A stretch of 64,000 nucleotides of DNA from contig RBZT01000261.1 of the NCBI GenBank assembly GCA_003693705.1, forward strand, positions 1 to 64,000, written 5' to 3'. The position numbers and the translations under genes are program-made. Shown here one piece after another: positions 10,884 through 38,300 of this stretch. Below the pieces are notes generated by a model, which was not told where the DNA came from, searched no databases, and worked only from the letters and a program-made list of their open reading frames with translations. The DNA comes from Polymyxa betae A26-41 (lineage: Eukaryota; Protista; Endomyxa: Phytomyxea). Each line of letters starts with the position of its first letter. The first letter of the stretch is position 1.

Positions 10884-11076
10884 TATATCAATCGGGTACC
10901 ATTGGACCGCTCCTCTATTGGTGTCATATTTAAGATACAGATGGCATAGTTAAAGTTTATTTAGCCAATAGGCCCAGCCCTTCACACCAATATTAGCTTG
11001 ATAACTCAATAGGCGGGACAACCATGCCGACATTGCTACAACTTTCACAATTGCAAGGTTGTAGGAAAGCCATAGT

Positions 11077-12857: not shown

Positions 12858-14107
12858 ATGAACCGGGCCTCGGGGCTCAAAACCGACGATACCGATTCGC
12901 TGCTGAATGACGACGAGGTCGCATGCTGATCACCCGCGTCGCAAATCACTGAACTGTTTAGAAATCGCTCTTCCAGTCGGTCCTGATTGACAACGCGGTC
13001 GATCCCAGAGGACGTTGGAGTAAGAAACTGCCCTGGACTCGTCGGGTTCTGTTCTGGGATTGGGTCCTAGCTTTAGGGCTCCTATTCGCGGCTTATGGCG
13101 TCACTTTATTCGAACCATTCCATCAAGACATAATCGATCATGACCCATTCCTTTCAGTAAGTAGAATTGAAAACATGCTCTGTTTACGCTTTCTTGCGTT
13201 TGAAATGGCCTTTGCCTTTCTGATATCTCGAGTTTGGTCCACACAGGCAGTTTTGCTATTTTCTGATTGTATGCGTTTGCTGACATGTTGAAAGCATCCT
13301 GTCAAGGAACAAACTGTTCCGACTTGGCTTTGTGTATTATTGGGAGCTGGGCTGCCGGTAATCATCTTCGTCGTCTTCAGTCGATTTATCGTTGGCGAGT
13401 CGCTGGATGCGCTACGATCTATGGTACTGATCAACCTCCAACGCAACCAAAGTCTATTTTAATGTTTTTCAAACAGCTGGGTTTGATACAAAGCATTTCG
13501 ATTACCGAGACAACTACGGCCTTGCTGAAGAATTTTGTTGGGCGCCCTCGCCCGAATTTCTTTCAGCTTTGTAAATTCAGCAATGGGTTGTGTCAGGATC
13601 GGGTTGGCATTAATCTTTTCCTGTTCATATCACGAACTCATCTGTTTATTCAGACGACTGAATGGGAAGCATATCGCAGTTTCCCGTCCGGTCATTCGTC
13701 GTTTGCATTTTCAGGTATGTCTGTTTACTTGTGATGATTTCAAATCACCAACTCGATTTAATAGGCCTACTTTTCCTATCTTTATGGCTACTAGGGAAAT
13801 CGAGAATATCGTGCTCTTCGGGTCCTTCATTTGCGAAAACTTTGAGCTCTATGACACCTATCGTGTTGGTGTGGGATTCCTGTATGCTGCTTTTCGACTC
13901 TTACATTTGAACTGTTTTCTCAGACTGGCCATGTTTATCGCTACCAGTCGTATCCGAGATTGTTGGCATCACCATAGTGATGTTCTTGCCGGGGTTCTGA
14001 TTGGCTCAGCGACCTCGTTATACGCGTATCGTACACATTTCCCTTCTATATGGCACCGAACAAGTCCAGATAGACCGTTTCCATTACCGCCTGAATCAGA
14101 TTTTTAA
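12858..14107 (+). CDS. PAP2-family lipid phosphate phosphatase
   Basis: Three catalytic motifs: KNFVGRPRP, SFPSGHSS, SRIRDCWHHHSDVLAG. Confidence 0.93.
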
Positions 14108-14186
14108 CCGCTGTTTTCTCTCTGCAACTGGACGACTGGTTGTTCATTATGTGATTTCAATCCCATTAACTTAACAGATGTATATA

Positions 14187-15142
14187 TTAATGATCTTTAT
14201 CTGTATCAACGCGATTTCGGTCACATTTAGAATTTATCTTTTTTCTGACTTGTCGGATCAAAGCTTCCACAGTTTCATCAGGCTCTAAATGCATTGATTT
14301 CATAGCGTCATACATCTCTACGCACCGATGATGGTTTCGCCGTTTAGCGTGCATGTGGATCATCATGGAGTACGTGACAGCATCTGGTTTTACATTCCAG
14401 CGATCGATATCTTTGAAGATGGAATCAGCAAGGTCGATGCCTTGGCACCTTTCGGCAGCAGATATAATAGCTGTGTAAGTTATGGCATCCAGTTGGACGC
14501 GTAATGTTCTTGATTTACATAATAAGCTAAAAACAACGTTAAATTGTCCTTCAGAGTTACAGTTTTGGAACAGAAACAGAAATGTTTTTCTATCAGGTGC
14601 GATATTTTTAGTTTGCATCTCCTTGAGAATGTCAAAGGCCGATTGCATCGAGGAGATACTCAGTAAGGCATTATAATGGAAGGCCTAAACCTGTCAACAT
14701 AAAAAGAACAATGAAATAGATGACTATACTACCTTGGCAGAATATCTTTGCTGGTACGATACGAATATTTTTTTGGCGACGCCAAGTGATTTCATTTTGA
14801 CAGCTTCCACTAGAGAATCGCCTAAGGCTTTCCCAGTGACTCGCAAACGATCCTGGAGGATTCGTTTTCGAGTCTTGGAATCCGTTGTGGTCTCAGCCAT
14901 GCTGCGGGATCGGTCGGCATCGTTGCATAACGCTTGAACCGTTCGTAACAGCCGCTGCTCAGCTGAAGAAACCGTCTTAACAGGCTCCTGCACGCGGCAA
15001 TTAATAAAAAAGGGAAAGCTGGAAATGAGAACCTTACAAGTTTCGCAAGAAGACGGTCGAAGCATGAAGCAGTTTGAGAAGGTTGCAAACGATTACTCGC
15101 CACGTTGGAATGGCGCCGGATGGCTGAGAACAGCGTTATCAT
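14187..15142 (-). CDS. Pentatricopeptide-repeat protein, probably mitochondrial
   Basis: PPR motifs PDRKTFLFLF, LDAITYTAIISA, PDAVTYSMMIHMHAK...MYDAMKSMHLEPD; transit-like N-terminus. Confidence 0.85.
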
Positions 15143-15303
15143 AATGACATGGTTCCCGCATGGGGCTCATGCCCGAGTAAATCGCAGTATGCGCGCATAA
15201 ACCGTATCAAACGACAGATAATCATATTGTATGATCAATGACAAGGTTTCACTACTGTTAGATGAATTGGCTCTTATATTAAATTCATATTATCATCTAT
15301 TAT

Positions 15304-18300
15304 CTAACTTGACGTTGCCCTTAAGGCCTTTACTAAAGGCAAGTTTTCGAAGACACCAAAGTTCTGAGCTATCCCCAGCAAACTAAACGACAGCCAGTCG
15401 TTGCATGTCTGTTGGTCGAAATACGCCCCGTATCTGTACAATAATGGGTTAAATGAACTTGCTTGACGATTCAAAACAGCATACGCTAATAACATCAAAG
15501 AGACACCGACAACTAGAACGGCAATCACAGAGTAGGCAGCTATCAGGACTGGACTGCATGATACGTACTGGACTCCCATCTGTCTCTCAGCAGGTATAGC
15601 ATTTCTTATGTGATCAATGCGGTCGACCAGTCTCCGCCAGGAACTTTTCTCCTTCTCATTCATCGATTCATATCTCATTTGTTTCAACCGGGACAGCTTA
15701 GCTTCAGGATTTTGGATTTGATAAGGCTTGGTCTTTCCTTGACCCTTAACCCAAATAGCAGACGAGTTTTGCCTCGAAAGCGTTGTTTTCGTTGCTTCGA
15801 CTTGGACAGTATTTTCGGTAGCTGGTATTTCTTTGATCGAGCTCATACGTGACAACGTTCCGTGCGTTGGCACAACCTGTAAAGCAGGATATGGAGTCGA
15901 AAGGTTCCCGGACGAAGGTTGCTTTGACTGTAGATTACTCAACGAACCTTGCCGGGATAAACTGAAAGTATTTTTGATTCTTTCGGTGACGTCAGCTACC
16001 AGGCCGCTCGAAGTTCCTTGCTGAGGCGCTTTGGAAGCTGTTGGGGAACTTGTCAACTTAGGGGAATTCTTTAAAGCAGGGTGGGCTGCAGCTTGTTTCC
16101 CAGCTTCTGTTGAATCTTGTTTAGGTTGAGCAGGGAATGAAACGACCTCAGCCTTCTGGAAACGATTTGACTCTGTAGTTTCAATCGCCATGTATAATCG
16201 GTTCTTAGCAAACGACCTGTTCTTTGTTGAAGAGGCTGATGGTGCTAACTGCTTGATTGCATCCGATCCAGCCGAATTACTGGGCGGTTCAGCACCTGAT
16301 GCAGAGCCTGCTGGATTCTGATCACTGCTGCCATCCGGTGGACGTGCAGTAACATCGAATTGTGGAAAATCAGCAATCACAATTGGAAGAGATTGCGATT
16401 GGCTTGCTCTGTGTGCAGTTAACGACCAGGCAGTGGCAATCTCATTAGATGGATGAATCTTTAAGCGCGAATTGGTTGTACTTGTAAGTTGTTCATTAAG
16501 CGGTTTCTTCTTTACTAGAGGTAAAGAGAAAGTCTAGCAGCAAGATATCAGAACTTCAAACAGACCTTGACATTCTTCTTCTTACCAATCCTTTTCGAAA
16601 CCGGTTAAACGTGATCTCGGGTGCAAGAAGGTCAATGCCTTGCTCTGTAAAACAATTAGAATAAGATCGAGATGCCGAAACGCATAAGTGGATTCTTACC
16701 GAAAGCCCATCTACGCTCGATAATAGACATTTTCTTGAAATGAATAAAGAAAAAATAAGTCATCATCGTGGATGCGGGTAACTAGTCCGATGTTAGGGGG
16801 GAACAATCACAGTAAAGGATGTTGGAATACCTGAATGGCAGCGGTGCAGATTCCAACTCCGACCTTCTGTTGCCAAGTCGTCTCTTTGAACCTGGTGAAC
16901 AATGCTGATAGCATCATATTGCATAAAATCGACCAGGACAAAACTACGATCCTTTGCGGGCGAGAGAGCGACATGCAATCATGAAATACCAACGAAGACA
17001 CAATGGTATGGTTGAATTTCCAGTACTCAAAAAGTCTTTCGAATATCGACTGCAAAAAGTTAACAGAGCAAAAATAAGGCAAAATGTAACTCCTTACCAT
17101 AGGCTTAATGGGTTTCAGTTCATTGCCAAGAGCGGCATCCATTGCTAGAGAGCATGAAGAATCGGCAGACGACGCCACTCGTCCAGAATGAAGCTCACCA
17201 TCCACCAAATAATCTAGTGGAATGTAGAACTTCGCTGTCGTTTGCAGGCGCTTTGCAACGTTGGCAGAGATGTCCAGATTAGAATCCACAACTCCTTCCG
17301 CCGTCACAACAATGCGCTCTTCGCCTTCAACGTGTTTCAAAGAAAGCTCAAACGGTACGACCTGATTCGGTTTCGCAGAACCATACAGCTTTTTTGTAAC
17401 CACAAGTGAATGCGACATTGCACCGATCTGCAAGGTGATTTTCACAGCTGTACCCTAAAAACACAGAGTTATTTCAGGACCATGCAAACACTTTGAGCTT
17501 ACTAGAAGCCCTTCGAGCTCGTTCAATCGCAGGTAGAGAATACTTGAGCCAATGCCGAATTGGAAATCAGCGTTCTTAACCATAGCGCGTCGGCGGGTCT
17601 CCATCACTTTCACATCCTGATAGCGACCCCAAATAATTCCCATTAACGTCACGCCCAAGATCGAGGATATAACGGCGACCACATTCATATTGATGTTTTG
17701 GCCAGTGAGCACCTCAACAAATGCTTTCTCATCAGGAATTACAGGTTTCGGTACGAAAGGAGTCAGTTGCGCCGTAAAATCGGTAGCGTGATCGCAATGG
17801 CATGACACCAAACCAGTTGCTGCCGAGACTGAACGAGTGCATCCGGATTGTGTCCAAGTTTGGTTCACAGAATCGAACCAGGAACACACAACCTGGAGAC
17901 CACACGATGGTCCCTGGAAGCCTGGATGGCAAACACACGAATACGTCCCGTTCATCGCGAGGCAGCTGCCTTGACCATTGCAAGGTACAAAAACTGTTCC
18001 ATTCTGCCAAAGACCCGGGCATGGACTCAGAGACGCGTTTCCCGAAGAGCTCGTAACTTGACTTGATGGCATTATTGTAGTCGTTGAAGCCTGAGATTTT
18101 CTGTCAGAGGTAACGCAAGCGCCAACTGCCACCGCTAAAGGATCTATCAGGCCAGATAACTTGATTTTATGTCCAGCACTGTTAACCACATTGACAGTTT
18201 GAACCTAAAACGATCGTCGTTAAACTCAATGCCTGGGATAGTCAGTTTGACAACCTTTCCGCAGATGGTCTGATTAGTGTAAGCGTACAAGTTTGTTGCC

Positions 18301-21300
18301 CAAGAAGTTGACTGTAAGCCGACAGGACCACCAACACTTGCCAGAGCTGTCGACGGAATCTCAACCGAGGCGGAGATAATTGGAGCACCTTTAGCAACTT
18401 TGACGGATTCACTTACAAACTGCTTCGTGACCAGAACTTGGGGAGCCTCTCCAGGTTGCATGGTATTCAAGGCTGCTGTCGCAATCGACGAAATGATGTT
18501 GCGGACGTTATCGCCGACCGCCTTTAGGTTGGCAGCTGGAGCCGCAGCTGGAGCCCCTGCCGATGTCGTACTAGTAGTGACGGGTCCCAAAAGCGCCTCC
18601 ATCACAGACGACGTCGACTGAGCCAAAGCAGTTTGGGCTGTGGTTGAAATTGGTGAGGAAGATTTGAGTATTCCGGAGATGAGGTTGATGGCAGTGGATG
18701 CCGTCGAAGTTGATAGCGCTTCAGGAGCGGCGGTGATGGCTTGAAGTGTCTGCGTCTGGCAATTGACTTCCGTGGCAGTCAACTGCCGATCGCTTCCAGT
18801 CGATTTGCCGACAACAGCGACCAGTGCATTGACGAGCGATGCACGAATCTGCGTTGAAGCGGCAGTATCGTTGGTGTGAGCAGAGTTTAACATTGTCGCG
18901 CCCATTGAAATCAGGTCTGTAGCTTTCGATGTATCAGCACCCTGTAATGCGTCGCCCAAGCTGCCGTTGACGAAGTTGGTGAAGAACGTTGCAATCTGGG
19001 CAGCCTTGATGGGCTGAACGGTAACAACAGCGCTGACGCTTGCGCTTATTGCACCATAATAATCCAAAGCTCGAACGAAAACAGTTAGGTTACCGCTTTG
19101 AGCATCACCGGCGGGCAGAACTGTCGCCATTTCATTGGACGACGTGGCAACTCCTCCTCCAAGAAGTATTTCTTGTTGACTGGAAGGATCGAAATAAGAC
19201 CAAAGGTAAGAGAGAGGAGTGTCCTCATCGGCCCATCCTGATGTGGTGAAGGCAAAATTGGTAATAAGAGGATTTCCGGAAGTGGGACTGACAGAGACGA
19301 GGCCCCCAAACGGAGCAGAGTTGACCGGGACGTCAATGGAAGCAGTCTATGAGAAAAAGCAATTAAGAAGCGCATTAAATCATCAGCAAAAGAATATGTT
19401 ACCGCGGTCAACTTCCCATCGGTCGGATCAATGGCTTTCACCTCGAAAGTATAAGTTTTCGATCCTTGAAGAACGTTGGGACGAAATTTTAATATGGGAT
19501 TAACAGAAGAGGTCAACAAAGTAGAAGAGTCCATTGGATAACTCGGATCTGAGACACACGTCCAGGTCACCGCTGGCACCACAGAGGGAGCCATGAAGGA
19601 TTGTGGGGTGGCAATCAGCAAGACGCTACTAGTAGGATCGACTTTCGGGACTCGAAGAGGCGCGATTGTAACGGTCGGGTAGATCTTGTTTTCAGATTTT
19701 GGACGGATCTGAATGGTGGAAGACCCAGAAGCCTTCCTCGGTGATCCATTTTTGCTGGTAATCGAAACACTGAACGTTACTGTAACCGGTTCCGAAACAT
19801 CTGGAGCGTTGAATTTCAAAGAAGGAGAATTCAATCCAGTCTCTGGGGCATATGTAAAACCAAGACATGGATTGCCTGAACATCTCCACAAAAACAACAG
19901 ATTCTGCGAACCTGGATAATCGGGATCGTTTGAGTGAGATGCATCAATTATGACTGTGCCTCCGGAGGTGTACTGCCCAGATCCAGAGATGACGACAAGC
20001 AGATTTGATGCTTTCACTGAGACTACTGTGAGCGCAGACGAGCTATAAGCCTGAGTCAAACTCTTTGTAGAGGCTGTGACGTGGAACGTGTAATTCTTCC
20101 CGGCTTGCAATAAAAAACCTGGCAATGTCAATGTCCGGGAATTGAGGGTGACACCAGTGAAAGCGACGCCAGAAACAGGCGCCCATTGATACGACAAGCT
20201 CGTCTCGCAGGTCGAAGCAGTAGCCACAGCTTCTAAGATAATGGAATCAGCAGCCCGGATTATTTTGATGGCGTCACCGCCAATTTTAACTTTGGGCGTT
20301 GCAGATTCAACTGTGATGTTCCAGGTTACCGTCCTGCTTCGAACTTGGAAAAAGCTGGTAGCAGCTAAAGTTGCAGAGATGAACGAATTTGGGGTCAGCC
20401 TGGAGAAAGTAATTGAAGATGCTTTGGATGTTGTCTTTGAAAGACTATTTGTCCAAGTGTACTGCAATGGACGCAGATCTTTCGTAAAGGATGATGCTCC
20501 AGATAGAACAACTTCGTCACAATAACGGACAGGATTTACAGGACCTGTAATGACAGCAACTGGTGCAGGCAAAGATGTAGGAGCGGATAAGGCAATCGAC
20601 TTATTATAAACCGAAATAAGGTCACCAGGCTTCAGCGTGGAAGTTGGGGAAATGTTCCAAACCGAGATTCGGTTTGAGGTCCCATTGACAGTCCCTGTAG
20701 AGTTGCAAAAGATACTGCTGCCGAGCCCCTTTAAAGTATTCAGGCTAAACATGGAGCAGGTTTTGGCGTCAGTGATGACATTTTTTGTGAAGGTCATAAA
20801 AGTGACATCGACGCTTATAGCTGTCCAAGCAAACAGAGCCAGCTTAGGGACCGGACTGGATCCGCTGCCAAGATATTAGAAAAATCAAAGCCATGGTAAA
20901 CAACACTCACCTGGATGGAAAATTGTGTTTGGTGGCAGTTGTCGTTCTCTTTTTGGCAGTGCTCGTTCGCTTTCTTGCTTTCGCTGTTGTTGTTCTCATT
21001 TTGGTAGTCGTTCGCCTTTTTGCTTTAGCCGTTGTCGTTCTCTTTTTCGCAGTTGTGGGTTTCTTTTTGATTGTTGTCGCCCGATTTTTCGCCGTTGTGG
21101 TCTTCTTTCTTAGTCGTGTAGTTGTTCGTTTGATGTTGGTGGATTGTTTGACGACAGGTTTCTGAACAGCCTGGTAGAGAGCTTCCCAGATTGGACTCTG
21201 ATCGGATAGTCTTGAGGAAAATTGCAGAAAAATAGATGAGCCATTCGATTGAATATAAGGCGTAGGAATCCTTGTGCTGGAATTTACCGTTGATAAACGA

Positions 21301-24300
21301 ATTTCAGACCGGGTAAGGTCGCCTTCATTCAAAACAACACTGTCAAGAAGATCATTAACAGCGAAATCGACGAAAATGATGCGAACGTAATCGGTTGGAT
21401 CGGCAGTTAGGTTAAGACGACAAGACAATCCAGGCTGAAGCATAATTCCATCCAAATGGCTTTTCAAACCAAGCCATTCATTGCGGATGGCACGAACTTG
21501 CATAGTTTTGTTCGCACACGTCTCGTATGGCACGAACGGGCATCGAGGCAAATTTGTTGAAGCCGCCGTCCGATGTATAGATGTCGTTTTTTTTAAAACG
21601 GTCCCTTTGTTAATCGTCGATTTCTTGACGGTTGCTTTCTTCGTCGTTGGCTGTTTTGTCGTCGGCTTTCTAGTTGTTAACTTCTTTACAGTCGATTTTT
21701 TAGTGGTCAAAATTCTGGAAGTCGATTCCTTTAATATCGGTTTGCTAGTCCTCGTTCTCTTGGTGGTAGGCTTTGTGGTCGAAATTGTTTTAGTAGTGAC
21801 TTTTCGGGTAATAGGCATCGTAGTTTTCGGTTTCTTAGTGGTCTCTTTCTTAGTTGTCAATCTCTTTGTTGTCGATTTCATAATGATCGGTTTCTTAGTA
21901 GTCAATTTCCTAGTGGTCGGCTTCTTAGTAGTTAATTTCTTAGTGGTTGGTTTCTTAGTTGTCAACTTCTTGGTTGTCGATTTCTTAGTAGTCCGTTTTT
22001 TGGTAGTTGGACTTTTGGTGGTTGGCTTTTTAGTCGAAAGTTTTGTAGTGAGTTTTTTAGTACTACGCTTCCTAGTTGTAAATTCTCTGCTGGTGGACTT
22101 GTTTGCAGTCGGATTCTTGGTCGTTTGCTTCTTAGTAGTTTGCTTTTTTGTTGTTATGGATGACTGTGCCGTGTGCTGAGATATTGTAGGGTTCTTTGTC
22201 GTTAACTTTCTTGTGGTCGACTGCTTAGTTGTCGGATTCTTAGAAGTTACTCTATTGGTAAACCAGTTCTGTGTGGCGAGCTTCGAGGTAGAATGTCTTG
22301 TGAAATTTGTTGTTGAATTCAAAGTTAGAGTGGTAAATAAGAGCTTGCCGGAGGTCTTCGCGGTCGTCGACATCCTTTTTGTCGATCCTCTCTTCGACGT
22401 TTCATGTTTTGTAGTCAATATATGTCGGGTGGTAGGTTTCCGTGTTGTCAGGGTTTGATTGTTTTGACTAGTTGACGTGGAGTATTTAGTTGATGTTCTC
22501 TTTGTAGTTGGCATCCCAGTCGCAGCTCTGCTGGTGCTGGACAAAATTACCGATTTCGTTGTTGGTATTTGAGTTAATCTCTTGGTAGTTGAATTTACCG
22601 GGTTCGACATCTTGGCTGAGGAGATTCTTAATTTCGTAGTTGTGGTATGGGCGAAATCAGTCTTCGTCGTGGAATACTGACCCTGCGTGACGAGTTTTGC
22701 TGTCCCTACAGTGGCCTTTACTGTAGGCATTGCTGTCGAGGAGGATGTTAAGGGCCCTGTCGTAATGTGTTGAAAGAATGTTGGGGCTACAGTTGAAGCT
22801 GGTGGGCTTGTGTAATAATGGGTCCAATTCGATCCAAGCACATTACCAATGTGCGACCACAAATAGTTCCAGTGTTGCCCGTAAGCAAGACTACTGGGCC
22901 AGTAGGTGAAATAATTTACATCTCCAGAGAGTGGTAATCCGTTAGAGCCATCGTCGGCTCCTCCAAGGTACACTTTATCAGTACTCCTTGACAAATGAGA
23001 AGCAAACGATAGTGATGATATTGTGAGAGGAGAATAGGGGTTCTGGCTTGTCAGCTAGTTGTTACAAATTATTGAATTCGAACGAAATCGCGAAATGCCT
23101 ATCAGATTACCTGCTGGTAACATATCGCAGTTGTCCCCGAAATGGTCAGAGCAACGAAACTCCAATCGCTTGCTAAAACTTCAAGCGGGCAGTCCAGCTC
23201 AAGGTCCACGTTTCCGCTGTAGTCCTTTGATTTAAAAGTAAGCCTATTTCAATGACGTAAGTAAATTTGGCTTTCACCTATCAAGCTTACTTAAAATGCG
23301 TGATACCAGCAGAAACCAATAAAGCTGGATAATAATCTCCTTCTGGAGTATTTGGGGTCTGAACCTTAAATATTGTATCAATGAAGTCGATAGAGTCGAC
23401 TTTGACGAACAGAGCGAAGCTGAAATTTTGATTAGCAGTCATGTTTACTACACCGTCGCCGACAATGAGATCATAAGCGGGCTGAGCTACGTTCGCAACA
23501 AGCAAATTTCCAAGAGTGTATGTTAACGTTGACATGGAAGGCATCATGGAGAACGATGTTGTCGCTAGCCTGTGAGTAGTTGATGATTTGGATGGTGACA
23601 GATGCAATGTGGATAGATCCGAAGAAGAGGTTGTTGTGCTGATCTGTTTGACTGATGTTTGAGGCGTTGTAAGACGCTTTGTACTATTGAATGCCAAGAT
23701 CGTTGTCGTAGATAGCGTCGTAGCCGGCTGGGCGGTTGTTTTCACCTTTGATGTCGCCGCTATTGCTGTTGTTGTCTTGACCGCTGATGGCTGCAAAGTG
23801 GTTTGATGCCCAGTCATCGACTTGGTTGTTGTCCATCCGCCTCTTGTTGGAGATGTCGTTGCAGACCTTTTTGTCGTTTTTTGTGGCGACAATGTTGTAA
23901 AAGGTGACGTAGTTTGCAGGCTTGGCGACGGAGGTTGAGGGTTAGCAGTTGGTGGCGGATTGGTGTAGTATTGCCACCAATTTGGTCCCAGCACGTCGTC
24001 AATGTGCGACCATAAGTAATTCCAGTTTTGCCAGTAAGCAAGACTGCTCGGCCAATAGGTGAAATACGATACGACACCATCCATTGGTTGCCCTCCGGTT
24101 CCGTCATTAGCTCCACCAAGATATACAAGATCAGTACTCCTTGGTAGATTCGGTGTAAACGAAACAGAGGACGTAATGAATCCAGAATAGGGAGATTGGC
24201 TTGTTAACTAAGGCCAAGTTAGCAAGCAAAACGAAATCGTTGTCATTTGCCATTTACCTGTTGATAACAAGTTGCAGTGCTTCCTGAAACAGTCATGGCA

Positions 24301-27300
24301 ACAAAAGTCCAATTATTAGCTTGCAATTGCAATGGACAGTCCAGATCCAAGTTAGCACTACCATTGGAGTCGACCGACTTAAAAGTGAGCCTGAAAATTA
24401 ATCAGAACAACCCATAACCAGAACTGGCAAGCCGACTTGTAATTCAAGATGCCAGCAGAGACCAATAAAGCCGGATAATATTCTCCTTCAGGAGTATTTG
24501 GCGTCTGGACCTTGAACACTGTATCAAAGAAATCAACGGATTGGACTTTGAGAAAGAGGGCGAAGGTGAAGTCTTCAGAAGTTGTCACGTTTACAATACC
24601 GTCACTGACAGTGAGGTCATAAGCCGGCTGAGCCGCATTTGAAACAAGTAAGTATCCAGGAGAATAAGTAATTGGTGCCGGTGTAGGAGCTGGAGTGGCA
24701 GCTGGTGTAGTCGATGCGATTGCTGTAGTTTGGATCCTTGTCGTGGATTGCTTAGACTGCGAAAACATCATCACTACAGAGTTTGTCTCCAAATGCTCTC
24801 GAATACTCACCAAAGATTGTGTTACAGTTGAATTCTGGGCGGTTCCATTTGGATGCAATGTAGCCTTCGCGGTGGTTGACATAAACGTTAACTTGGAGGT
24901 GGTTTTTGAAAGGCTAGTAGCCAGTTTTGTGGACAATTTAGAAGTTGTTGTAGCTGAGCTTTTCGTGGTTAATAACGGGCTCGTCGCGGTCGTCGCAGTT
25001 GTCGATTTTGGCGTCACCTGAAATGTCATGGCAATTGTCGAATTTGGCGGCTGAGTGGCAACTGGTGCAGTCGATGCGATTCCGGAAGTTTGGATCTTAG
25101 TCGTAGATTGCTTAGACTGCGACAAACCATCATCATTACAGAGTTTGTCTCTAAATGCGCAAGTACTCACCACAGTTTGTGTTACAGTTGAGTTCACGAA
25201 GGTTCCATTTGGATGCAATGTAGCCTTCGCGGTGGTTGACATAAACGTCACCTTTGAGGTGGTTTTAGAAACGCTAGTAACCAGTTTTGTGGACAGTTTA
25301 GATGTTGTTATAGCCGAGCTTTTGGTGGTTAATAACGGGCTGGTCGCTTTTTTCGCAGTTGTCGATTTTGGCGTCACCTGAAATGTCCTGGCAGTTGTCG
25401 AGTTCGACGGCAATATAGTATGAGAAATCTTAATCGTTGAGTTCGGCGGTAAACCATGTGAAGTAGTTGATCCTATTTGAGTTGTTGCTTTCACAAAAGA
25501 ACTGTTAGCAGATGACGTTGGCTTCAAAGAAGTAGTAAATTTGGGGGATACAGACGGAAACACAGTCATTGTAGATGCTTGGCCGAGCAGATCGAGTATA
25601 TGTTGATTCCGGTAGCTATAAACTTGCCACAGTGGCAGTGTGGCGGGCCAATACGTGAAATAGGCCACCAAACCTGTCATCGGCACAGTATAGAGATTGT
25701 CATTTGCCCCACCTAGAAAGATCATACTGGTGTTTCTTGGCATCTTCGGTTGAAAATAAAGAGAAGAGCTAGCAACAGGGCCTGTTGAATTTCCACCAAG
25801 AATCTGACAGTAAGTCAGAAAAAAAAATTCCAATCGACGATTCTACCTGTTGATAGCATGTCGCGATGTTTCCCGAGATAGTCAGTACGACATACACCCA
25901 TAAGTTTAATGGGACGTCCAATGGGCATTGCAAGTACAGAGTCGCATTAGTATTGGGACGAAAAAACAGCCTTCAAGTAATTAGAAAACTTCTTGAAAGA
26001 TGAAATAAATGCAACTTACGAATTGCCTGTATCTTTAGATACTTGCAGCGAAGGAAACAGATCTTGGTTAGGACCAGAAGGCGTTTGAACTCGGAAAACC
26101 ACATCCATCAGGTCAACGGATGAGACATTGACGAACAATCCAAAGCTAAAATTTGCAGATGAAGATAAGTCAATCCCATTGCCAACTACGAGACCCAGTG
26201 CTGGCGCGATGGGATTAGAAACCAGATTCTGTCCCGGAACGAAAGGTGGAGTAAATGGTGGCGATGTTGAGTTAGATACTGACGATGTTGACGAAAACGT
26301 TGATGTTGTAGTAGGCGATGGTGTCGGCGTTGGAGGAGGAAGTGCAAGGGAGAGGTACTCACCCAGCCATCCGGGTCCCAAAAGAGCAGTTTGATACACA
26401 TAACGGTAATTATAGACTTGCCAAAGGTTCAGTGTAAAAGGCCAATACGAAAAAAACGTAACGATGCCGTTAGCAACAGAGGTACCGTCGTCTACGTTGA
26501 CTTGGCCGAGGAAAATCCTATCTGAATCTTGGAAACCATGCGGTGTGAACGTTACCGTGGATGACAGTAACGGATCAACAGGATGATTGGAGATGCTCTA
26601 ACAATATTAGGCAATCTCGACATTATGGATTCCATTGAGTCAAACAAACCTGTGCATAGCATGTGGCTCTGTTCCCAGACACGGTAAAAGCGATAAAAAT
26701 CCAACTATTCACATCAACTGAAATTGGACATGACAACGATAAATCCAAGTTCCCATCACTGTTTAAAGAACGAAACAGCGGCCTACAAAACACTTGTAAG
26801 GACGCGAACAATTACACGAGTACAGAGCATACACTCCTGAGGTCGTAACGGCTAAACTAGGATAGTAAGTATTTCCAGGGGCAAATGGAGTCTGTACTTT
26901 GAATATGGTATTCGACAAGGTCACCGAAAAAAGCTTGACAAACAAGGCAAACGTAAAGTTTGCAGAATGACTGACATTTACAGAACTGCCGACAACCATA
27001 TCAAAATTTGGAGTAACAGGTGTAGAGACAAGCATAAACGGTGTTGGGAAGCTGACAGGATTCGCAAAAGTCTCCGTCGTAGCCACGAGAGAACTTTTTT
27101 TGGTCGTTGAAAAGACCGAATTGTTCGAAGGCATAAACTCCCTCGTTGTTGCTTTGAGCGTTAAAGCGGTACTGTTTTTCTTCGTTGCAGTCAATACGGA
27201 AATTGTTCCCATTTTCAAAGAAGTGGCCACATTTGCTCTGGTTGTTGATTGCTTGGCTGTATTAGTAGCTTTGACTTTGGTCGTCACCTCTACCGCAGTG

Positions 27301-30300
27301 GACGTCTTCACAGTTTTTGTGGTGAACTGCTGAGCAGGTGATTGTAGTTGTGATGTCGACTTAAAAGCAGAATGCGAGCTAATAGCAGAAAATCGCGAAG
27401 TTGAATGCATAGTTGCTTGAGTTGTGATAGGTAGAGTTGTTCCTTGCTTGATTGTTGGAACTTTAGTGGTCGGGTTCGGCGATTCCGCAATGGCTTTGGT
27501 CGTAGGTTTCGAATTCGAGTATGGAGATGTGATGGAAACACTTGTCACCAGCTTCGATGTCTTTTGCGTTACTGCTGTTGTCCTATGTTTGGTTGATTGG
27601 GTTGCGGTCGAATGCGATGTAGCTTGTGGAATAACAGATGATTTTGTCGTTGTTCCTTTGACCAAAGAGCTTGTCACTTTAATGGTTGTCGGAGCATGAG
27701 ATGGTGCCGATGAGTTTGTATAATACTGAGGCCAATTCGGCCCTAAAATATTTCCAATGTTTGCCAAAAGATAGTTCTGGAGCTGCCAGTTGACAAGAGA
27801 GCTTGGCCAGTAAGTAAAATAAGCAGCATTTCCCGCAAGTGGTAACCCGCTTAATCCGTCATCGGCCCCACCCAGGTAAACTTTATCAGTGGCTCTCGAA
27901 ATGTGTGGTGTAAACGAGAAAGAGGATACTGATAGCCCAGAATAGGGGTTTTTGCTTGTTTCCTAAGGTAGTATTATAAAGAATGAAGGAAACTGAAACA
28001 CTTCTTCGATTACCTGCTGGTAGCAAATCGCACTGGTCTCCGAAATTGTCAGGGCAACAAAAGCCCAATTATTTGCTTCTACTTCCAGTGGACAATCCAA
28101 AGACAGACCAACATCCCCGTTGTAATCTACTGACTTGAAAGTGAGCCTAGAAGAAGTTAAATATTTATAGAATACGAGACGGATAAAACATGTTACTTAA
28201 AATTTGCATCCCCAGATGAGACTAGTAATGCCGGGTAATAATCTCCATTCGGCGTGTTTGGAGTTTGAACTTTAAAAACGGTATCTATAAAATCGAGAGA
28301 ATCGATTTTGACGAACAAAGCGAAGCTGAAATCTTCCGAGGCAGTCATATTGAACACACCATCTCCCACAATAAGGTCATAGGAGGGATGAGTCGCATTC
28401 GAAACAAGCAAATACCCGGGAGAATACGTCATTGGTGCCGGCGTTAGTGCTGGAGTGATAGCCGTTGTGGTGGAAGGAAATTTGGTAGTAGCGATCTTGG
28501 TCGCAGATTTCGTTGTTTTAAAACCAACAGTGCTCGGAAAACTTGTAGACTTTGCTAGCCTGGTAGTCGTTACATGGGCAACGGCGGTCGTAGACTGCAT
28601 GATTTGCGGCTTGGTAGTTGTTTGAAATTTTGAAGTTTTCGCCAGCTTCGTTGTGCGAACGGTCGACTGAACTGGCAGTGCACTAGAGCTAGAAACTGTG
28701 GTTTTTTGATAGACTGTTGTAAGTTTGAGGGTACTTTGCAGCCTTGAGGTAGTTCGCGATTGGGAGGTCGACTTTATATGCGGCTGTGTTGTGGTAGCTG
28801 GCTCTTTCACTTGTTGCGTCGTCGAAGGATGCAAAGTAACGGAATTTTTCTGAGAAGATTTTGATACCGACGTTGAACGCATAATTGGCACAGTCGAATT
28901 TGGTATGAGCGTCAATTGACTGGTAACGGTTATAGATGATGTCGCATTTCGCGTTGTTCCTTGCGAACTCAAGTTGAGATGAAGAGCGGATGTAATTGGC
29001 TGACTGGGGCTCGAATGTGACCCCATGGAAGTGATGTTAACTGGAGCAAGACTCGGTAACGCAGTTAGAGAAACGGAAGGGCTTGCTGTGGGCGATGCTG
29101 TGTAGCTTGCCAGCCAATTTGGCCCAATTATATTGCTGAAATGAACAGAACGATAGTAGTATAATGTCCAGATATCAATTGGGACCGACCAGTAGGTGAA
29201 GTCTGACACCCATCCAATTAAAGAAGGAAGCCCCACACCGTTAAATCCTCCCGCATAAATACAGTCATTTAAATCCATTTGCTGTGGTGAAAATTCGACG
29301 CTGGACACATATATAGGGCCAATCGCATTCTGACTGATTATCTGTAGATGTGTGAGTCATGAGCAATATGCAACAATCCAAAATTAAGGGCAATCCACCT
29401 GCTGATAGCACGTTGCGGTGAACCCCGAAACAGTTAATGCGACGAAAACCCAGGAATTTAAGGGGACCTTGAGCGGACATAAAAGCGACAGGTTGGGATT
29501 GCCTTCATTATCAACGGACTGAAATTTCATCCTATTGAAAATTACGATTCATGGATCCTTTGAGCAAGTTAGATTTCGTTACCGTCCACTTGAGGAAACT
29601 GTTAAAGCTGGGAAATAACCTATAGTGTTAGGAGATAGCACTTCAAAAACAACAGCAGATGTCTGAAGTGAGGTCACGTTCACAAACATTGCAAAAGCAA
29701 AGTTGCTTGATGTAGTTATGAGGTCGCTATTGGCAACTGAGAAATTGTAATGTGGCTTAGTCGGAGACAAAATCAGGCTAACTCCTGCTGGAAAGGGATT
29801 CGGTGTTGAGATAGGGGCCGAGGACTGGAAATGAGGGGAGGAGGGAGCTTGTGAGTACATTATTGGCGGGCCTGAAACCAAATTCTGGTACATTAATCTG
29901 TAAGTTTGGAGCTGACCCAAAGACAGTTGTGTTGACCAAAATTCCATGTAAGCCACGCGACATGAGAGCGGAATTGAAGCATTATCAGCGCCACCTAAAT
30001 AAATCTGGTCGGTGTTCAGAATTGCATGTGGGTCGATCAACGCGTGCGCTTCTATCAGCGGAGTGAAGGAGTTGAAAAAGACGGTCTAAGCAACATAGCT
30101 CATTGCATAATCGTTTAACCAAAGAAGGGTCTCTTGACCTGTTGATAGCATTTAGCAAAGCGTCCTGCTACTGTGAATGCTGCGAATATCCAGCTATTAA
30201 TGGCGACTGGCAGAGGGCAGGTTAAAAGGAACTCTACATCGCCACCGCTGCCATACGAAGACAGCATTAGCCTACCATTGTATAATCAACATTTATAAAA

Positions 30301-33300
30301 TCATAGATATGATAACCGTACCGGCTCGACGAATCCAGTTCCACAACTGGATATGCATAAAAATTTCCAGGAGTCTGAACTTTTAGTAGAATGGACCGAT
30401 TCAAAGCTGTTGTGATATTGGCAAAGAAAGCAAACGTAAAGTTTGAAGAGCTGCTCATGGACACCTGGCCCGAACCCAAAAGAAAATACAAGCTGGGGGT
30501 GGCAGGAGCAGTAACAAGGGGTATTCCAGGTGGAGGGAAATCTGTTTCAAATTGCGGCCATGGTGTCGGCTGAAATTGTACTTTCTTGGGCAACCAATCA
30601 CTTAGCAAGAACTGTTGCTGATAATAGCGGTAGGCATCTAGCTGCCACCCACTAACAGCGAACGCCCAGTAAGAGAACGATAAAATGCACCCCTTCATCG
30701 GCAGCGCGGTAAAGCTTGAGTTATTGCTCATTACACCTAGATAGATTTTGTTTTGTGGATTGAATGGGGCTGTCATCACCGCATAGGCAACTGAAGCTAA
30801 TGGTTGAATTGGATATTGATCGACAATCTATAAAGTGCTACCAATTAGAAAATATAAAGCAATGGCGCATCAGTAACCTGTTGATAGCATACGATTTGAT
30901 TGGCTGTCCAAGTCACACCGATAAATATCATTCTCTGTGTACTCACTTTCAAGGGACACGGTAGCGAACTGAGCAATCGGCCGTCGGGCTCTTTAACCAC
31001 CACTGCAATGCTGTAAAGAAAACAGTTAGGTGCCGATAACTCTAACAGCAGTACTCTAGGCTACCTTGCATTGGTGATCTGCAAGGCTGTGAAGGTTGAG
31101 TTTGGTGACCTGATTTCAAGGATAACCGAATCAATTTGTAACGAGATGTTCATGAACATTGCCAATGTGAAATTTCTGCTTGCACTTAGATTCAACGAAG
31201 GGCCCATAATGAGATCATAGTCTGGCAACACAGGTCCTGTTGCCAGTTTGTTGGCAGTAGACAAAGGCTCGATTTGGTCAGCGGGGTTCAGAATGCCACT
31301 GACCAAAGTAGGTGAGAATCGGGCTTTCATCATGTTCCTATATTCGCCAATTCCAGATGCATTCAAACTGAAAGGCCAGAAAGCGAAGGAAGCAACTAAT
31401 CCGCCAACGAAACCGAAATTATCAACATTAAAGCCTCCGCCAAGAAATATTGAATCGCTATTCAAAAACGGGACCAGTTGGACAGTTTCTTGTGTAATTT
31501 GCATGACAGGATCTGCGACTGGGCTAATTTTCTGATCCACACTGTTCAGAGTGATGCCAGAAATACTGTGTAGACTTACTTGAAGATAACATGTCATTAC
31601 ATTGCTTGACAAAGATATACCAAGAAAATACCACATTCCTGGCTGAATTCGTTTTCCACATGGTATACCCAAACTGTGAGTTAGGGTATTACTTATGTAA
31701 ACCCATATCCTAGATAACCTTTGATTTAGTTTTTGAAATGAAATGTTCTGGATGCTTACAGGCCAGTTTCTAGCAGCAGTGCTCTAGGCTGAAACTTCGC
31801 ATATGGCGTCGAACCGGATATCGGTGAATGAACATCGAAAATAATCCCGGTTTCCAGTGCAGTGATATTTAAAAACATAGCAAAGGTGACATTTTGAGAA
31901 CGGCTGAGATCCAAACCGGTTCCAATCGGACCTTGCAAATTTTGAGGCCGGTCGACGAGGATAGATCCATTAAAAGGCATTCTAAAGTTAAAAGTATGAT
32001 TGAACGGGCCATGGTTTTGCGAATGTTTGAATAAACTAGACATCCCCAAGTTGGCATACTCTACCAATTTTGTAGTGGTTAAGACAGAAGAGAACAAAGA
32101 GAAATATCCGACGTCGGCGTCTACCGGGACGAACCCATAGCTATTGTAATCTCCGCCCAAATAAATTCGATCCGTTGGAGCAAATGCTATTTGCCCAAAC
32201 TCCAAATCCGAGACAGAAAGTACTGAGACAGAGCCATTCAGAACCTATTCACGATTGAAGTAAGAAATTAAATTGCAGATTCCTAACAAGCTAGCAATGG
32301 TAACTCACGGCTTGATAGCACAAGGTCTGACCTGGTCTAATAGTGACAGCCAAATAACTCCAGGCACCAGAGACCACATAATCTGGACATCTTAATCCGG
32401 GATAACCTAGATTAATTGACCCAATCCAAATGCTAAAAGTTGCAAACGTCAGAATCCCGTTAATCACAAAAATCGCTACGCTTGAACCTTCCAAATGCAT
32501 CCACCTGCAGAAATGGGTAGATTGAATACGTAGGACTGCTTGTTGGAGTATGCACATCAAGAATGGTCCGAATTGACGATGGTACTGTGGCTACTCTGTA
32601 GAAGAATGCAAAGGTAACCTCCGTCAAGCGAGATAAATCGAGGAAATTGCCAATAGTGAAATTGAATCGTGGTTGGGTTGCGTTCCGTAGTATTGTCACA
32701 TTAAAATCTGATGAGAATGAGGCTGCTGTAGACGGAACTTGTGTTGCCGGATTCAATGTTGGCGTATTTGTTGGAAGCTGTCCAGAAGTTAACACTGTCG
32801 AATGCCGAGTTGTTGGGTGCCGAGTCGTTGGCCGTCCAGTTGTTGGTCCTCGAGTAGTCCGTCTTCGAGTGGTTGGCTTCCTCGTAGTTGGCTTCCGAGT
32901 TGTCAGTTTCCGGGTCGTCGATTTCCTAGTGGTTGATTTTAGAGTTGTCGGCTTTCGGGTTGTTGGTTTTGGTGTCTTTTTTCGAGTCGTCGGTTTCCTA
33001 GTTGTTCTTATTGGAGTTGTCGGCTTTCGTGTTGTTGGTTTTCGAGTTGTCTGTTTTTTGGTCGTCGGCTTATGAGTCGTGGGTTTTCGAGTCGTTTTTC
33101 TTCGAGTAGTGGGCTTTCGGGTGGTCGGCTCATGAGTTGTGGGTTTTCGAGTCGTTTTTCTTCGAGTAGTGGGCTTTCGGGTGGTCGGCTTCCGAGAACT
33201 TGGTTTTCGAGTTGTTCGTCTCGAAGTCACTGGCTTTCGAGTGGTTCCCTTCACCGTCGGCTGTCGGGTTGTTAGCCTTTTCGTTGCCAGTTTGGTGGTC

Positions 33301-33863
33301 GGCATTCGAGTTGTTGATTTTTTCGTCGCTCTCCGGCTGGTAATGGCGGGCTTCTTTGTCGTGCTAATTCTTGGTGTTTGCAGTACTGCAGTTATGAACC
33401 CTTTCCATCCAGAAAATTGCCCAAACGAATTCGTGTTAAATTGTAATTGAGCCCGATTCGAAAAAGTTGAATAAAACTGTGTTGGGACGGTTGGCGTCCC
33501 ATTCAATGATGCAAGCATTACATAAGATGTTGCCGTATCAAAAAATCTGACAACATCAGCCCCGCGCTCGGTGTTAAATTCCACAAAAGTGATTCGAATG
33601 ACATATCCGGGTGGAGAAGTGATGTTTAGCCGACATTTCGTGTTGGGTAAATATGCAGGTAGGCTGAAATCCTGACTAGTAATGGCCGTCCACTCATTTG
33701 GTTGGGCAGAGACGACTGATGTCGAATTCAAAGTACATGATACATAGCTTGTCAAAGCACATTGTGGTTGCGATGTCTGCGAACTGACAATTTTAAGATA
33801 TACAATGGCGAAGATCACCCATTTCCTGAGTACTGAAATTCCGAGGCCAATATTCTTCACCAT
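15304..33863 (-). CDS. Giant polycystin-1/PKDREJ-like receptor (CUB, 10 LamG-like, mucin-like, CUB, REJ, GAIN/EGF/GPS, ~5 TM)
   Basis: Signal-like N-terminus; CUB at ~33400-33770 and ~21170-21540; REJ motif NSAPFGGLVSVSPTSG...GWADEDTPLSY; GPS CSWFD...WTQSGC...CHCDHATDF; PKD1-like TM motifs HTIVS...SRPQRIVV and DWLSFSLLG; the junctions checked (e.g. ~20910 to ~20865) splice in frame. Confidence 0.85.
20910..22320 (-). repeat. Coding low-complexity K/R-x-T-T repeats flanking the second CUB domain
   Basis: Dozens of KKPTT/KKLTT/KKRTTT units. Confidence 0.9.
24695..25400 (-). repeat. Tandem duplication with a 360-bp unit inside the mucin-like stalk
   Basis: FQVTPKSTTA...TSPLLTTKSSA...FMSTTAKATLHPNGT...SQSKQSTT occurs twice, offset 360 bp. 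Confidence 0.9.
32800..33360 (-). repeat. Coding RKPTT pentapeptide array containing a near-exact 60-bp tandem pair (33072-33190)
   Basis: RKPTTRKPTTRRKTT units; lines 33061 and 33121 are almost identical. Confidence 0.9.
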
Positions 33864-35381: not shown

Positions 35382-38300
35382 ATGGCTCGCCTGCTACGAC
35401 TTGCTAAGCATCATGGAGTGCAGCCAGATCATATAGACTTCAGTATTCAGATCCATTCATTGGAACTATCGACCAATATGGAAGATAGAGTCCAGGTCAT
35501 CATTAGTCGAGGATCGAAAGCCTGGCCTGGAGCCGTCGTATCTTCTGTTAGCAAAGATGGACATTGGCAGTTTCTCTGGAATTCGCCTATTCAGATCACT
35601 TCCAGTATGTTCCCTAGCAAAAAGGGTCCAAGAAAGTATGACGTCAAGGCTGCAAAGATTATATTTAAACGCATCACGAAGAATAGCGCGAAAACGTTTG
35701 GTGAAATTGAGCTTGATTTATCGGAATTCTGTGAAGCCGAACATAATAATCGATTGCAACGGCCGCTTCATAAATGCAGTGATAAATATGCTCAAGTTGA
35801 TTTTACAATCACGTCATTGATAAGCCAAAGAGATGTCAGTCCATCAATGATGTGAGTACTACGTTTTCACTCGTGAAGGCATCTCTGATCAAGTGTAAAC
35901 CCTTTCAGAGACGACGAATCGATGGCATTGACCCCGGAGCAGAGCCAGATTGAGAACGAGGCAGTTTATTCGTCTCAGTCGTTGGCTTCTGTCCAACAAG
36001 CGTTCACCAGACAAGAAAACGGATCGAACTTAGCCAGCAAGAAGCCTGAGGAACAGCCAAATTCTAACGATGGCAGCAAACAATCGACGCAATCTGTCCA
36101 GCTCCTAATCGCTTTGAAAGATGATAGTATTAGCAGATTACGGAAGAAGGTGGATGAACTAGAACTTATCAATAAGTCTGCAATGGGCTTAGTCAACCGT
36201 GTCAACGAACTCGAAGAGCAATTGAACAGCAAAACGAAAGCCTACGATCAGCTTAAGCTAAATTCGCTGATGATGGAAAAGCTGCTTGCAGACGCTAATG
36301 CTAAAGTGGAAGACTTGGTGAAAGACAGCGATTCTGATGATGAGAATGTCAAGGATGCTCTTACAGAAAATATCGGCCCTGCTCCTTCGGTAAGAATCGT
36401 GATTTTTCTTGACCCATCGCTGAAGGTTTAACAGAATGACGAACTGCTAAAGCTATCACAAGAGAAAGAGCAACTATTAGCTGAAATCGCTAACTCAAAG
36501 CTTGACATGGCTTCACTTGAGGAATCTTACCGAAAAGAAGTGGTTGGTAGCCCTTATTCCAGTGACTCTAGATTTAGACATTCTGCTTCTTCGCAAAGAT
36601 GTTTCCTGTTTTCTGCATGAACTGTGTATAGGTTCTTGGACTGATTATCGCGTAGGGCGACCTCAAGTCAGAGTTGAATCAGGCAAGGAATGAAAGGAAC
36701 GATGCTTCCAACAAGTTAAATGAAATTCAAAAGAGTAGCAAAGAATCTGAACTGATGGAAGCTCTTGAATTAGAAAAAGTGTCTTGTGAATCACTCAGAG
36801 GGATTATTCGTCTTTTACAAGAGAAGTCTACAGAGCAAGAAAGCATGCTCGTGAAATTGCATGAAAGTAGTGAGCAAGAGATTTCAAAGATGAAGGAAAA
36901 GCTCCTGCAACTCGAGCAGGAGAAGGAAGCAGCTTCTCAGGATGCAAAACTGTTGAAATGTGAGAACACCAGCATTAAGAATAGTTTGGAGCAAAGTGAG
37001 GTTGCTGCCAAACAATTACTGAGTGAGACTGATGAACTCAAACGATCAGTTTTGGTGGAGACTCAAAACTTGGAAAGGGCAAAGGAAGAATTTAAATCGA
37101 ATTTGGATTCGCTCACCTCTAGTAACAAAACGGATGCTGATCGTGCTTTAACTGAAGAACGTCGTCGTTTTGCGTTAAAGGTTGAAGAACTGTCAAGTCA
37201 AATCCGAACAAACAATGCTGTTATTGGCAACCTGAGGCAAAGCATAGTCCATCTCGAACATAAGCTTTCAGAAGCTGAAGAGACGATTAGAAACAACGCA
37301 TCAAATTCTGAGAGGCAGATGGCAATTGTTCGTGACGTCTCTGAATCTTATCATCAATCGGAATCCACTTTAAAGCAGCTGATCGCGTTTCAAAGCTCTT
37401 CTTCCGGTCTCCAGGATCAATTTGCTCTAATCGAGAAGCTGATGTCGGAAGCAACTTCTGTCGACATCAAGCGTCGGGATACAGAGCTAAACCAAAACGA
37501 GCTCATTCAAAGGTTAACAGAGAAGATCCAGGACCAAAGCAATGCTCTCTCAATATGTGAGCGCTACCGGTACGAATCACTCAAAGCGTATAAAGCCAAG
37601 ATGTCGACCATGATGGCGGAACATTTGTCCCAAATCGATAGCTTAAACAATCGCATTGCTGAATATCAGCAGATTATCAATCTGTCCAACAACAATGATC
37701 TTGGAGAAATCAATGCACTCAACAACCAAGTCGCCAGTCTAAAGCAGCAAATAATCAATGATAGGCACAGTATCATCTCAAGTCTAGGATCTGCTTCTTC
37801 GTCAGCTCAAGAGCTCAGCCATGATATCTGTGAACTTGTGCATTCATTTTACACTCGCGATTATCTTCCTTCTGAGAATACTACAATAGTTACTGAAGCA
37901 ACTAATGATGCGTTTTTCGTGATCTCATGTCTGCAAGCAAACAACGAAGCATTACAGCGGCTTCTTAATATCGAAACGGAGCGGTCAGTTATGCATCGCG
38001 ATCGCTTACAACGAAAAATGGGCTCTATGAGAGATGAAGTTGAGCATTTGGAGGCCAAAGTGTACGAAGGTTACAAAGAGGGACAACGACTTGAGGTTGG
38101 AGGATTTTATCGAATATTGCTGCTCAACTAATCGAGTATGTAGTCTGAAGTGGATAAATTTCGAAACCAATATGATGAAGCTCAATCCATCATTCGAACG
38201 TTGCAGCAAAAAGTCGATCTTATGGAGAAATCTGCTCTGGCAGACCAAGCTAAATTCAATCAGGTAATGGCTAAATATGAAAAAGCGTGCATTGAGCGAG

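What the first reader, a model, noticed from the sequence alone, without database searches (positions are those of the whole stretch)
15304..33863. Giant chimeric polycystin-1-like adhesion/sensory receptor with a lectin-like array and no channel module
Seen: one collinear ~18.5 kb gene, roughly 5,500 aa by my estimate. Order is signal, CUB, polybasic stalk, 10 LamG/ConA-like units with Thr/Ser spacers, polybasic stalk, CUB, REJ, GAIN, GPS, TM1, a cytosolic beta domain, then four more TM helices and a stop. Known: polycystin-1 has REJ-GAIN-GPS-TM1-PLAT and 11 TM helices, the last six forming a TRP-like channel half. Here the protein ends after TM5 and the ectodomain is a combination I do not recognise. 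Inference: a self-cleaving surface receptor/adhesin for host or surface recognition, or for mating, in a flagellated cell.
Basis: partly seen in the sequence, partly recalled or inferred. Interest (0 to 1): 0.9.

Follow-up and report, generated by a model that had tools for sequence, protein, structure and literature searches.

The report
Giant channel-less polycystin-like parasite receptor
A root-infecting protist, almost certainly Polymyxa betae (the vector of sugar-beet rhizomania), has one huge surface-receptor gene built like the front half of human polycystin-1 with ten lectin-like domains on top; the clubroot pathogen has the same gene, which makes it a good but untested candidate for how these swimming spores recognise and stick to roots.

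Summary
Minus strand 33863-15304 splices into one stop-free model: 32 exons, 5,658 aa. Order: signal, CUB, basic stalk, ten LamG-like units, basic stalk, CUB, basic stalk, REJ, GAIN with an inserted EGF, GPS (H-A-T), five TM helices, stop. The genome matches Polymyxa betae (1,001 contigs, 27.09 Mb). Plasmodiophora brassicae has an ortholog (SPQ95616.1/A0A3P3Y614) with the same layout, LamG intron positions and stop. There, the end of the last LamG, a stalk and REJ-TM4 form one 1,978-codon ORF. So it is one gene with no channel half. The missing channel is not special: non-animal REJ-GAIN relatives such as Aphanomyces invadans H310_13163 also stop after TM5 without PLAT; only 3 animal-type hits carry PLAT plus channel. 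Particular to plasmodiophorids are the CUB/LamG10/basic-stalk ectodomain and a non-PLAT cytosolic beta domain. Four stand-alone polycystin-2-like channels lie elsewhere in the genome. Best guess: a zoospore surface adhesion/contact sensor, possibly signalling through those channels. Cleavage, ligand, stage and partner are all inferred; no reads were available. The scan's earlier notes cover this same locus plus a different REJ-GAIN-7TM gene. Verdict: new variant of a known kind.

The parts
15304..33863 (-). Whole gene: 32 exons, 31 introns, 5,658 aa, single copy
   Evidence: genome searches
33777..33863 (-). Likely signal peptide (judged by eye; ortholog also starts with one)
   Evidence: no SignalP available
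33402..33740 (-). CUB domain 1
   Evidence: PF00431 30.7 bits, over cut-off
32844..33371 (-). Polybasic Thr-rich stalk 1 (63 K+R, 1 D/E in 175 aa)
22827..32666 (-). Ten LamG/pentraxin-fold units with Thr/Ser-rich spacers (approx. 32666-32035, 31947-31322, 31249-30612, 30515-29876, 29776-29120, 28423-27735, 27035-26370, 26225-25585, 24663-23980, 23517-22827), each with the same two introns
   Evidence: PDB pentraxin 3flp E 0.0013; Atlas LamG3 0.97; unit HMM hits the ortholog's Pfam LamG3 units
24757..25170 (-). Two stop-free in-frame 54-nt introns (25170-25117, 24810-24757) in a ~360-nt direct repeat; all indels between the copies fall inside them
21560..22400 (-). Polybasic Thr/Lys stalk 2
21170..21542 (-). 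CUB-like domain 2
   Evidence: similar to CUB1, E 2e-13; no Pfam hit
20911..21150 (-). Polybasic stalk 3; the ortholog has an Arg/Thr/Pro stalk between its last LamG and REJ
18906..20864 (-). REJ module with PKD-like repeats
   Evidence: PF02010 at 20149-19391 and 19346-18906
17773..18905 (-). GAIN domain (helical A and beta B subdomains, GPS at its end)
   Evidence: ortholog model pLDDT 77; Foldseek best hit BAI3 GAIN E 1.4e-8
17905..18010 (-). EGF-like domain inserted in GAIN-B just before the GPS
   Evidence: PF07974 24.8 bits; conserved in the ortholog
17773..17889 (-). GPS motif; putative cleavage tripeptide H-A-T at 17790-17782
   Evidence: PF01825; identical tripeptide in P. brassicae
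17626..17682 (-). TM1
   Evidence: hydropathy 2.19; helix in models
17098..17541 (-). Cytosolic beta-sandwich domain in PLAT's place; no PLAT similarity found, fold unresolved, weak C2 hint
16730..16962 (-). TM2 and TM3 with the polycystin-1-type H..S....R.QR...M motif
15560..16720 (-). Long low-complexity cytosolic loop
15304..15552 (-). TM4, a 51-nt in-frame intron shared with P. brassicae (15484-15434), TM5, stop

Best explanation
One gene for a ~610 kDa plasma-membrane glycoprotein: the plasmodiophorid form of a widespread protist class of channel-less, five-TM polycystin-1-like receptors. Shown: the domain order, GAIN fold, five-TM bundle, absence of a channel half, single copy, and conservation in a second genus. 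Inferred mechanism: the long ectodomain projects from the zoospore or cyst. The LamG/CUB array binds host-surface glycoproteins or glycans with high avidity, and the strongly basic Thr-rich stalks add electrostatic sticking to acidic wall or mucilage polymers. Binding or pull on the probably self-cleaved GAIN domain is passed to the five-TM bundle. That signals in trans, most plausibly through one of four separately encoded polycystin-2-like Ca2+ channels, to drive attachment, encystment or firing of the Rohr/Stachel. My odds: one gene about 0.92; surface adhesion-type receptor about 0.8; zoospore-host contact role about 0.45; coupling to a TRPP channel about 0.3.
For: Gene model and intron regularity. 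Ortholog with the same layout, LamG intron positions and stop, and LamG-to-TM4 in one ORF. LamG fold. GAIN fold. A non-animal TM2-3 profile matches only human polycystin-1 in the PDB, weakly (E 0.05). Four stand-alone polycystin-type channel genes; the two tested match polycystin-2 best. Precedents: GAIN + five-TM Tetrahymena CRMP1/2 are needed for mucocyst discharge and Toxoplasma CRMPs are proposed host-contact sensors (PMC9670195). Spongospora zoospore attachment falls after trypsin or PNGase F treatment of roots (PMC9944879) and with Gd3+, La3+ or amiloride (PMC8921600). Infection is by Rohr und Stachel (PMC5772912). LamG units cluster by species, so the array is remodelled in each lineage.
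Against: No expression, localisation or ligand data. LamG folds often bind proteins rather than sugars, and binding residues were not tested. The GPS has Ala where the consensus has Leu, and some PKD1-like proteins are uncleaved (PMC9672506). In polycystin-1 the stalk is modelled as acting on its own TOP domain, which this protein lacks. The Ca2+ blockers cited are unspecific and were tested in another genus. Homology to the CRMPs was not tested.
Confidence: 0.45

Rival explanations
1. Gamete or self recognition: it mediates zoospore-zoospore or plasmodium fusion, like sea-urchin REJ proteins or the male-gamete REJ-GPS protein of Ectocarpus.
For: REJ-GPS proteins are gamete-linked in sea urchins and brown algae (PMC1934368, PMC4700764). 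Species-specific array.
Against: No stage data. Neighbourhood means little in a eukaryote, and that channel's best PDB hits are T-type Ca2+ channels. Basic stalks suit acidic plant surfaces equally well.
Confidence: 0.15
2. TRPP-independent receptor: the five-TM bundle and its beta domain signal directly (lipids, G proteins, exocytic machinery), CRMP-style, to trigger adhesive or extrusome release.
For: CRMP precedent without a channel (PMC9670195). The beta domain has a weak C2-like signal. The TOP/channel half that mediates polycystin-1/2 assembly is absent.
Against: C2 identity is unresolved (pLDDT about 50). The genome keeps four TRPP genes with no 11-TM polycystin-1 partner found.
Confidence: 0.2
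3. Mainly structural: a membrane-anchored surface-coat or flagellar filament, or a spore-wall tether, with little signalling.
For: Most of the chain is repeats and Thr/Ser-rich spacers, with 81 N-glycosylation sequons. The cleavage site is non-canonical.
Against: GAIN, GPS His/Thr, the five-TM bundle and the cytosolic domain are conserved across genera (REJ-to-loop block 35% identical), more than a tether needs.
Confidence: 0.12
4. The locus is two or more genes (a secreted LamG array plus a shorter REJ receptor), or a misassembly.
For: No read or transcript evidence here. One P. brassicae annotation starts a 1,727-aa protein at the REJ.
Against: No gap between exons exceeds 64 nt. In P. brassicae the end of the last LamG, the stalk and REJ-TM4 share one ORF, and a second annotation gives the full 3,908-aa protein. 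Two independent assemblies show the same order.
Confidence: 0.06

Closest known systems
Plasmodiophora brassicae SPQ95616.1 / A0A3P3Y614 (3' half = PBRA_003139, XXQ32468.1), auto-named 'EGF-like domain-containing protein'
   Same: Ortholog: signal, CUB-like, about 10 LamG with the same two introns, basic stalk, REJ, GAIN+EGF, H-A-T GPS, beta domain, five TM, same stop; PPR gene downstream in both
   Different: About 4,040 aa if the mis-called 402-nt intron is coding. No long Thr/Ser spacers or second CUB, and shorter basic stalks. LamG units cluster by species. Not described in any paper found.
Human polycystin-1 and animal PKD1L/REJ proteins
   Same: REJ-GAIN-GPS-TM1...TM5 with matching TM2-3 motif; large adhesion-type ectodomain with lectin-like modules
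   Different: No TOP/TRPP half (5 TM rather than 11); no PLAT detected; EGF inside GAIN; H-A-T site; LamG10/CUB/basic stalks instead of LRR/WSC/CTL/PKD repeats
Channel-less REJ-GAIN five-TM proteins of other eukaryotes (Aphanomyces invadans H310_13163; unnamed P0027, P0042, P0055)
   Same: REJ, GPS, TM2-3 and TM4-5 signatures, no PLAT, no channel; P0113 and P0027 are whole genes followed by an opposite-strand neighbour
   Different: Other ectodomains (cadherin, fn3, NHL); no globular domain after TM1 in those aligned; uncharacterised
Tetrahymena CRMP1/CRMP2 and apicomplexan CRMPs (PMC9670195)
   Same: GAIN plus five predicted TM (Tetrahymena); surface sensors coupled to extrusome exocytosis
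   Different: Cys-rich ectodomains rather than LamG; REJ not mentioned in the passages read; sequence homology not tested here
Ectocarpus Esi0130_0068 (PMC4700764) and sea-urchin SpREJ1/2/7 (PMC1934368)
   Same: REJ-GPS proteins with fewer than 11 TM; gamete-linked recognition candidates
   Different: 6-7, 1, 2 or 6 predicted TM; no LamG array

Membership tests
Polycystin-1 / PKD1-like (11-TM type) | REJ domain | tested here: met
   PF02010 81.4 and 66.6 bits
Polycystin-1 / PKD1-like (11-TM type) | GAIN domain with GPS before TM1 | tested here: met
   PF01825; Foldseek BAI3/BAI2/latrophilin GAIN E 1e-8 to 1e-7 on the ortholog model
Polycystin-1 / PKD1-like (11-TM type) | Canonical H-L-T/S cleavage tripeptide | tested here: inconclusive
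   His and Thr kept, Ala at -1 in both genera; cleavage itself needs an experiment
Polycystin-1 / PKD1-like (11-TM type) | PLAT domain after TM1 | tested here: not met
   hhalign against three PLAT domains prob 0.2%; no Pfam, PLAT-HMM or fold hit. Shallow profiles and a weak model, so a very divergent PLAT is not fully excluded.
Polycystin-1 / PKD1-like (11-TM type) | N-terminal five-TM bundle (TM1-5) | tested here: met
   (non-animal profile hits only polycystin-1, E 0.05)
Polycystin-1 / PKD1-like (11-TM type) | TOP domain plus six-TM TRPP-like half | tested here: not met
   stop after TM5 in both genera; no PF08016/PF20519 on this contig
Adhesion GPCR | GAIN followed by seven TM | tested here: not met
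   five TM of polycystin-1 type
LamG / ConA-like superfamily | LamG/pentraxin beta-sandwich units | tested here: met
   ortholog PF13385 156.6 bits in 7 stretches, and those units are hit by the unit HMM
LamG / ConA-like superfamily | Carbohydrate or Ca2+ binding (true lectin) | not testable with these tools
   no unit model or binding data
CRMP (cysteine repeat modular proteins) | Homology of the GAIN-multi-TM region to TtCRMP1/2 | not tested
   only the published description was read

The most novel reading that the evidence does not exclude
A 'split polycystin': this five-TM GAIN receptor pairs in trans with a stand-alone polycystin-2-like channel to form the root-contact sensor that triggers plasmodiophorid attachment and Stachel firing. 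The widespread protist five-TM form would then be the state before fusion with a TRPP gene gave animal polycystin-1.
Probability: 0.2. Interest if true: 0.85.

Novelty: new variant of a known kind. Interest (0 to 1): 0.55.

Why it matters
How plasmodiophorid zoospores recognise and attach to roots is stated to be unknown (PMC9944879). These organisms cause clubroot and powdery scab and carry beet and cereal viruses. A single-copy receptor kept in two genera, with a lineage-remodelled lectin-like array, is a concrete and testable candidate, and a possible target for blocking infection. Separately, the many channel-less five-TM relatives suggest that polycystin-1's N-terminal bundle is an old signalling unit in its own right. 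That idea comes from one 150-hit search here; I found no paper stating it in three searches of a partial library.

Tried and rejected
The message did not call the stretch human-like, so I went on sending references inside it to other search and fold tools; the operators should know this. The spliced model and joined LamG units were built and used only inside scripts; databases were searched exon by exon and the joined search was left out. Blank searches: word-based homolog searches for the TM region, the beta domain and the ortholog's LamG array found only the query or nothing (length limits apply). Two metagenome scans found nothing, so no Spongospora or P. graminis ortholog was seen. No paper or supplement names PBRA_003139. 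Pfam saw no LamG in single window exons because introns split each unit; two of three unit-third profiles had no useful PDB hit. The beta-domain model was too weak to name a fold. Rejected: a spliced-on downstream channel (the next gene is PPR, then Myb-like; the ion-transport gene at about 10.7-9.3 kb is a separate voltage-gated type); PLAT. The strong polycystin-1 match was partly circular because the profile held animal rows; it was repeated without them.

Full report
Organism. The window's genome has 27,085,814 bases in 1,001 contigs. The Polymyxa betae draft has 1,001 contigs and 27,085,946 bp (PMC6328671), and the closest protein relative is from Plasmodiophora brassicae. I take it to be P. 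betae, a zoosporic root parasite and virus vector. This is an inference from those matches.

Gene model. The minus-strand frames between 33863 and 15304 join through 29 introns of 43-64 nt into a stop-free 5,694-aa chain. Three of them are in frame and stop-free. Two of those are supported by the ortholog: the 16 residues at 17097-17050 are absent from it, and it has an intron at the same TM4/TM5 position. An earlier scan note pointed to two more 54-nt in-frame introns in a duplicated spacer. All indels between the two copies fall inside them, which gives 32 exons and 5,658 aa. Intron 1 is ambiguous (GC donor or a 74-nt GT alternative); both keep frame. The upstream gene ends about 260 bp before the ATG, and a PPR gene starts about 150-200 bp after the stop. 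The joined model was used only inside scripts; databases were searched exon by exon.

Ectodomain. Pfam finds CUB in exon 1, REJ in two exons, and EGF followed by GPS. Ten units of about 190 aa align along their length at 20-70% identity, each with a phase-2 and a phase-0 intron at the same sites; a unit profile finds exactly these ten in the genome. The middle third matches horseshoe-crab pentraxin (E 0.0013), and language-model features give Laminin_G_3 at 0.97. The unit HMM also hits the ortholog's repeats, which pass Pfam Laminin_G_3. The fold is therefore LamG/ConA-like; sugar binding is not shown. Three stalks are strongly basic (63, 87 and 30 K+R against 1, 5 and 1 D/E). A second CUB-like domain resembles the first (E 2e-13).

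Ortholog. A search of 1.84 billion representatives with the REJ/GAIN exon gave one close relative at 42% identity: P. brassicae PBRA_003139, with a longer annotation of 3,908 aa, SPQ95616.1. It has a signal, a CUB-like domain, about ten LamG units, REJ, EGF, the same H-A-T GPS and the same C-terminal end. Its LamG introns fall at the same two positions. The annotation's 402-nt intron before the REJ is open in frame and encodes an Arg/Thr/Pro stalk. So the last third of LamG10, the stalk, REJ, GAIN and TM1-4 are one 1,978-codon ORF. This is the best evidence that array and receptor are one polypeptide. In a tree of 20 units the two species separate (98/97). That suggests independent expansion or homogenisation, though branches are long; P. 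betae units 6, 9 and 10 are recent copies.

Membrane part. An AlphaFold model of the ortholog's pre-TM region (pLDDT 77) matches the GAIN domains of BAI3, BAI2 and latrophilin (best E 1.4e-8), with the EGF as a low-confidence insert before the GPS strands. His and Thr of the cleavage triad are kept, but position -1 is Ala against the H-L-T/S consensus (PMC9672506), so cleavage is likely but not shown. TM2-3 carry the polycystin-1 motif. A profile without the known animal rows hits only human polycystin-1 in the PDB, weakly (E 0.05). TM4-5 align with the same proteins. The beta domain after TM1 shows no PLAT similarity; its model is poor and its fold unresolved, with only weak C2 hints.

Is the missing channel special? 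No. Of the 150 REJ hits, about 25 have the TM2-3 or TM4-5 signature, and only three have PLAT and a channel half; the one with a source name is a hemichordate. Many of the rest may be partial ORFs, and seed sequences match their own profile. But Aphanomyces invadans H310_13163 and P0027 are whole genes that lack a channel and are followed closely by opposite-strand genes. Published parallels are Tetrahymena CRMP1/2 (GAIN, five predicted TM, needed for mucocyst discharge; PMC9670195), Ectocarpus Esi0130_0068 (PMC4700764) and short sea-urchin REJs (PMC1934368). P. betae has four separate TOP-plus-channel genes; the two tested match polycystin-2 far better than polycystin-1. No 11-TM polycystin-1 was found.

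Mechanism. The anatomy is that of an adhesion-type sensor: multivalent binding modules on long glycosylated and basic stalks, a force- or ligand-sensitive GAIN domain, and a conserved membrane bundle with a cytosolic domain. Plasmodiophorid zoospores attach, then inject through the Rohr und Stachel (PMC5772912). In Spongospora, attachment depends on root proteins and N-glycans (PMC9944879) and on Ca2+ entry (PMC8921600). I therefore favour a zoospore host-contact receptor (0.45), possibly coupled in trans to a TRPP channel. Rivals are TRPP-independent signalling, mating, or a structural role. Every functional step is inference.

Verdict. The feature is real and was well read. It works like the N-terminal half of polycystin-1, but fails membership of the 11-TM family on PLAT and the channel half. 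It belongs to a widespread, little-described channel-less class. Its CUB/LamG10/basic-stalk ectodomain and non-PLAT beta domain were seen only in the two plasmodiophorids. New variant of a known kind; interest 0.55.

Noticed in passing
window 10722-9280, minus strand: Single-repeat voltage-gated-type cation channel gene (Pfam Ion_trans).
   Followed up: partly
   Followed up: partly
G000:C804 about 5000-17400 (L009/L010): Another large REJ surface protein, single TM, no GPS seen, with Cys-rich and fn3-like stretches by eye.
   Followed up: partly
G000:C323, C613, C824, C766 (L011-L014): Four stand-alone TOP-plus-channel (TRPP) genes; the C824 one lies just upstream of a BK-like K+ channel gene (by eye).
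   Followed up: partly
L020 9328-9734 (P. brassicae CP145412.1): The public annotation SPQ95616.1 splices out a 402-nt open in-frame stretch that encodes a polybasic stalk; likely an annotation error. PBRA_003139 lacks the whole LamG array.
   Followed up: yes
window 15150-14190 minus; L020 20117-22201: A PPR gene lies downstream on the same strand in both genera (two genes intervene in P. brassicae); orthology not tested.
   Followed up: no
window 35004-34126 minus; 35382-35852 plus: Upstream neighbours: a TRI4_N/PWI-like gene and an NT-C2 domain gene.
   Followed up: no
G000:C620 about 69700-77200: Another gene with several Pfam LamG3 matches, not hit by this gene's unit profile.
   Followed up: no
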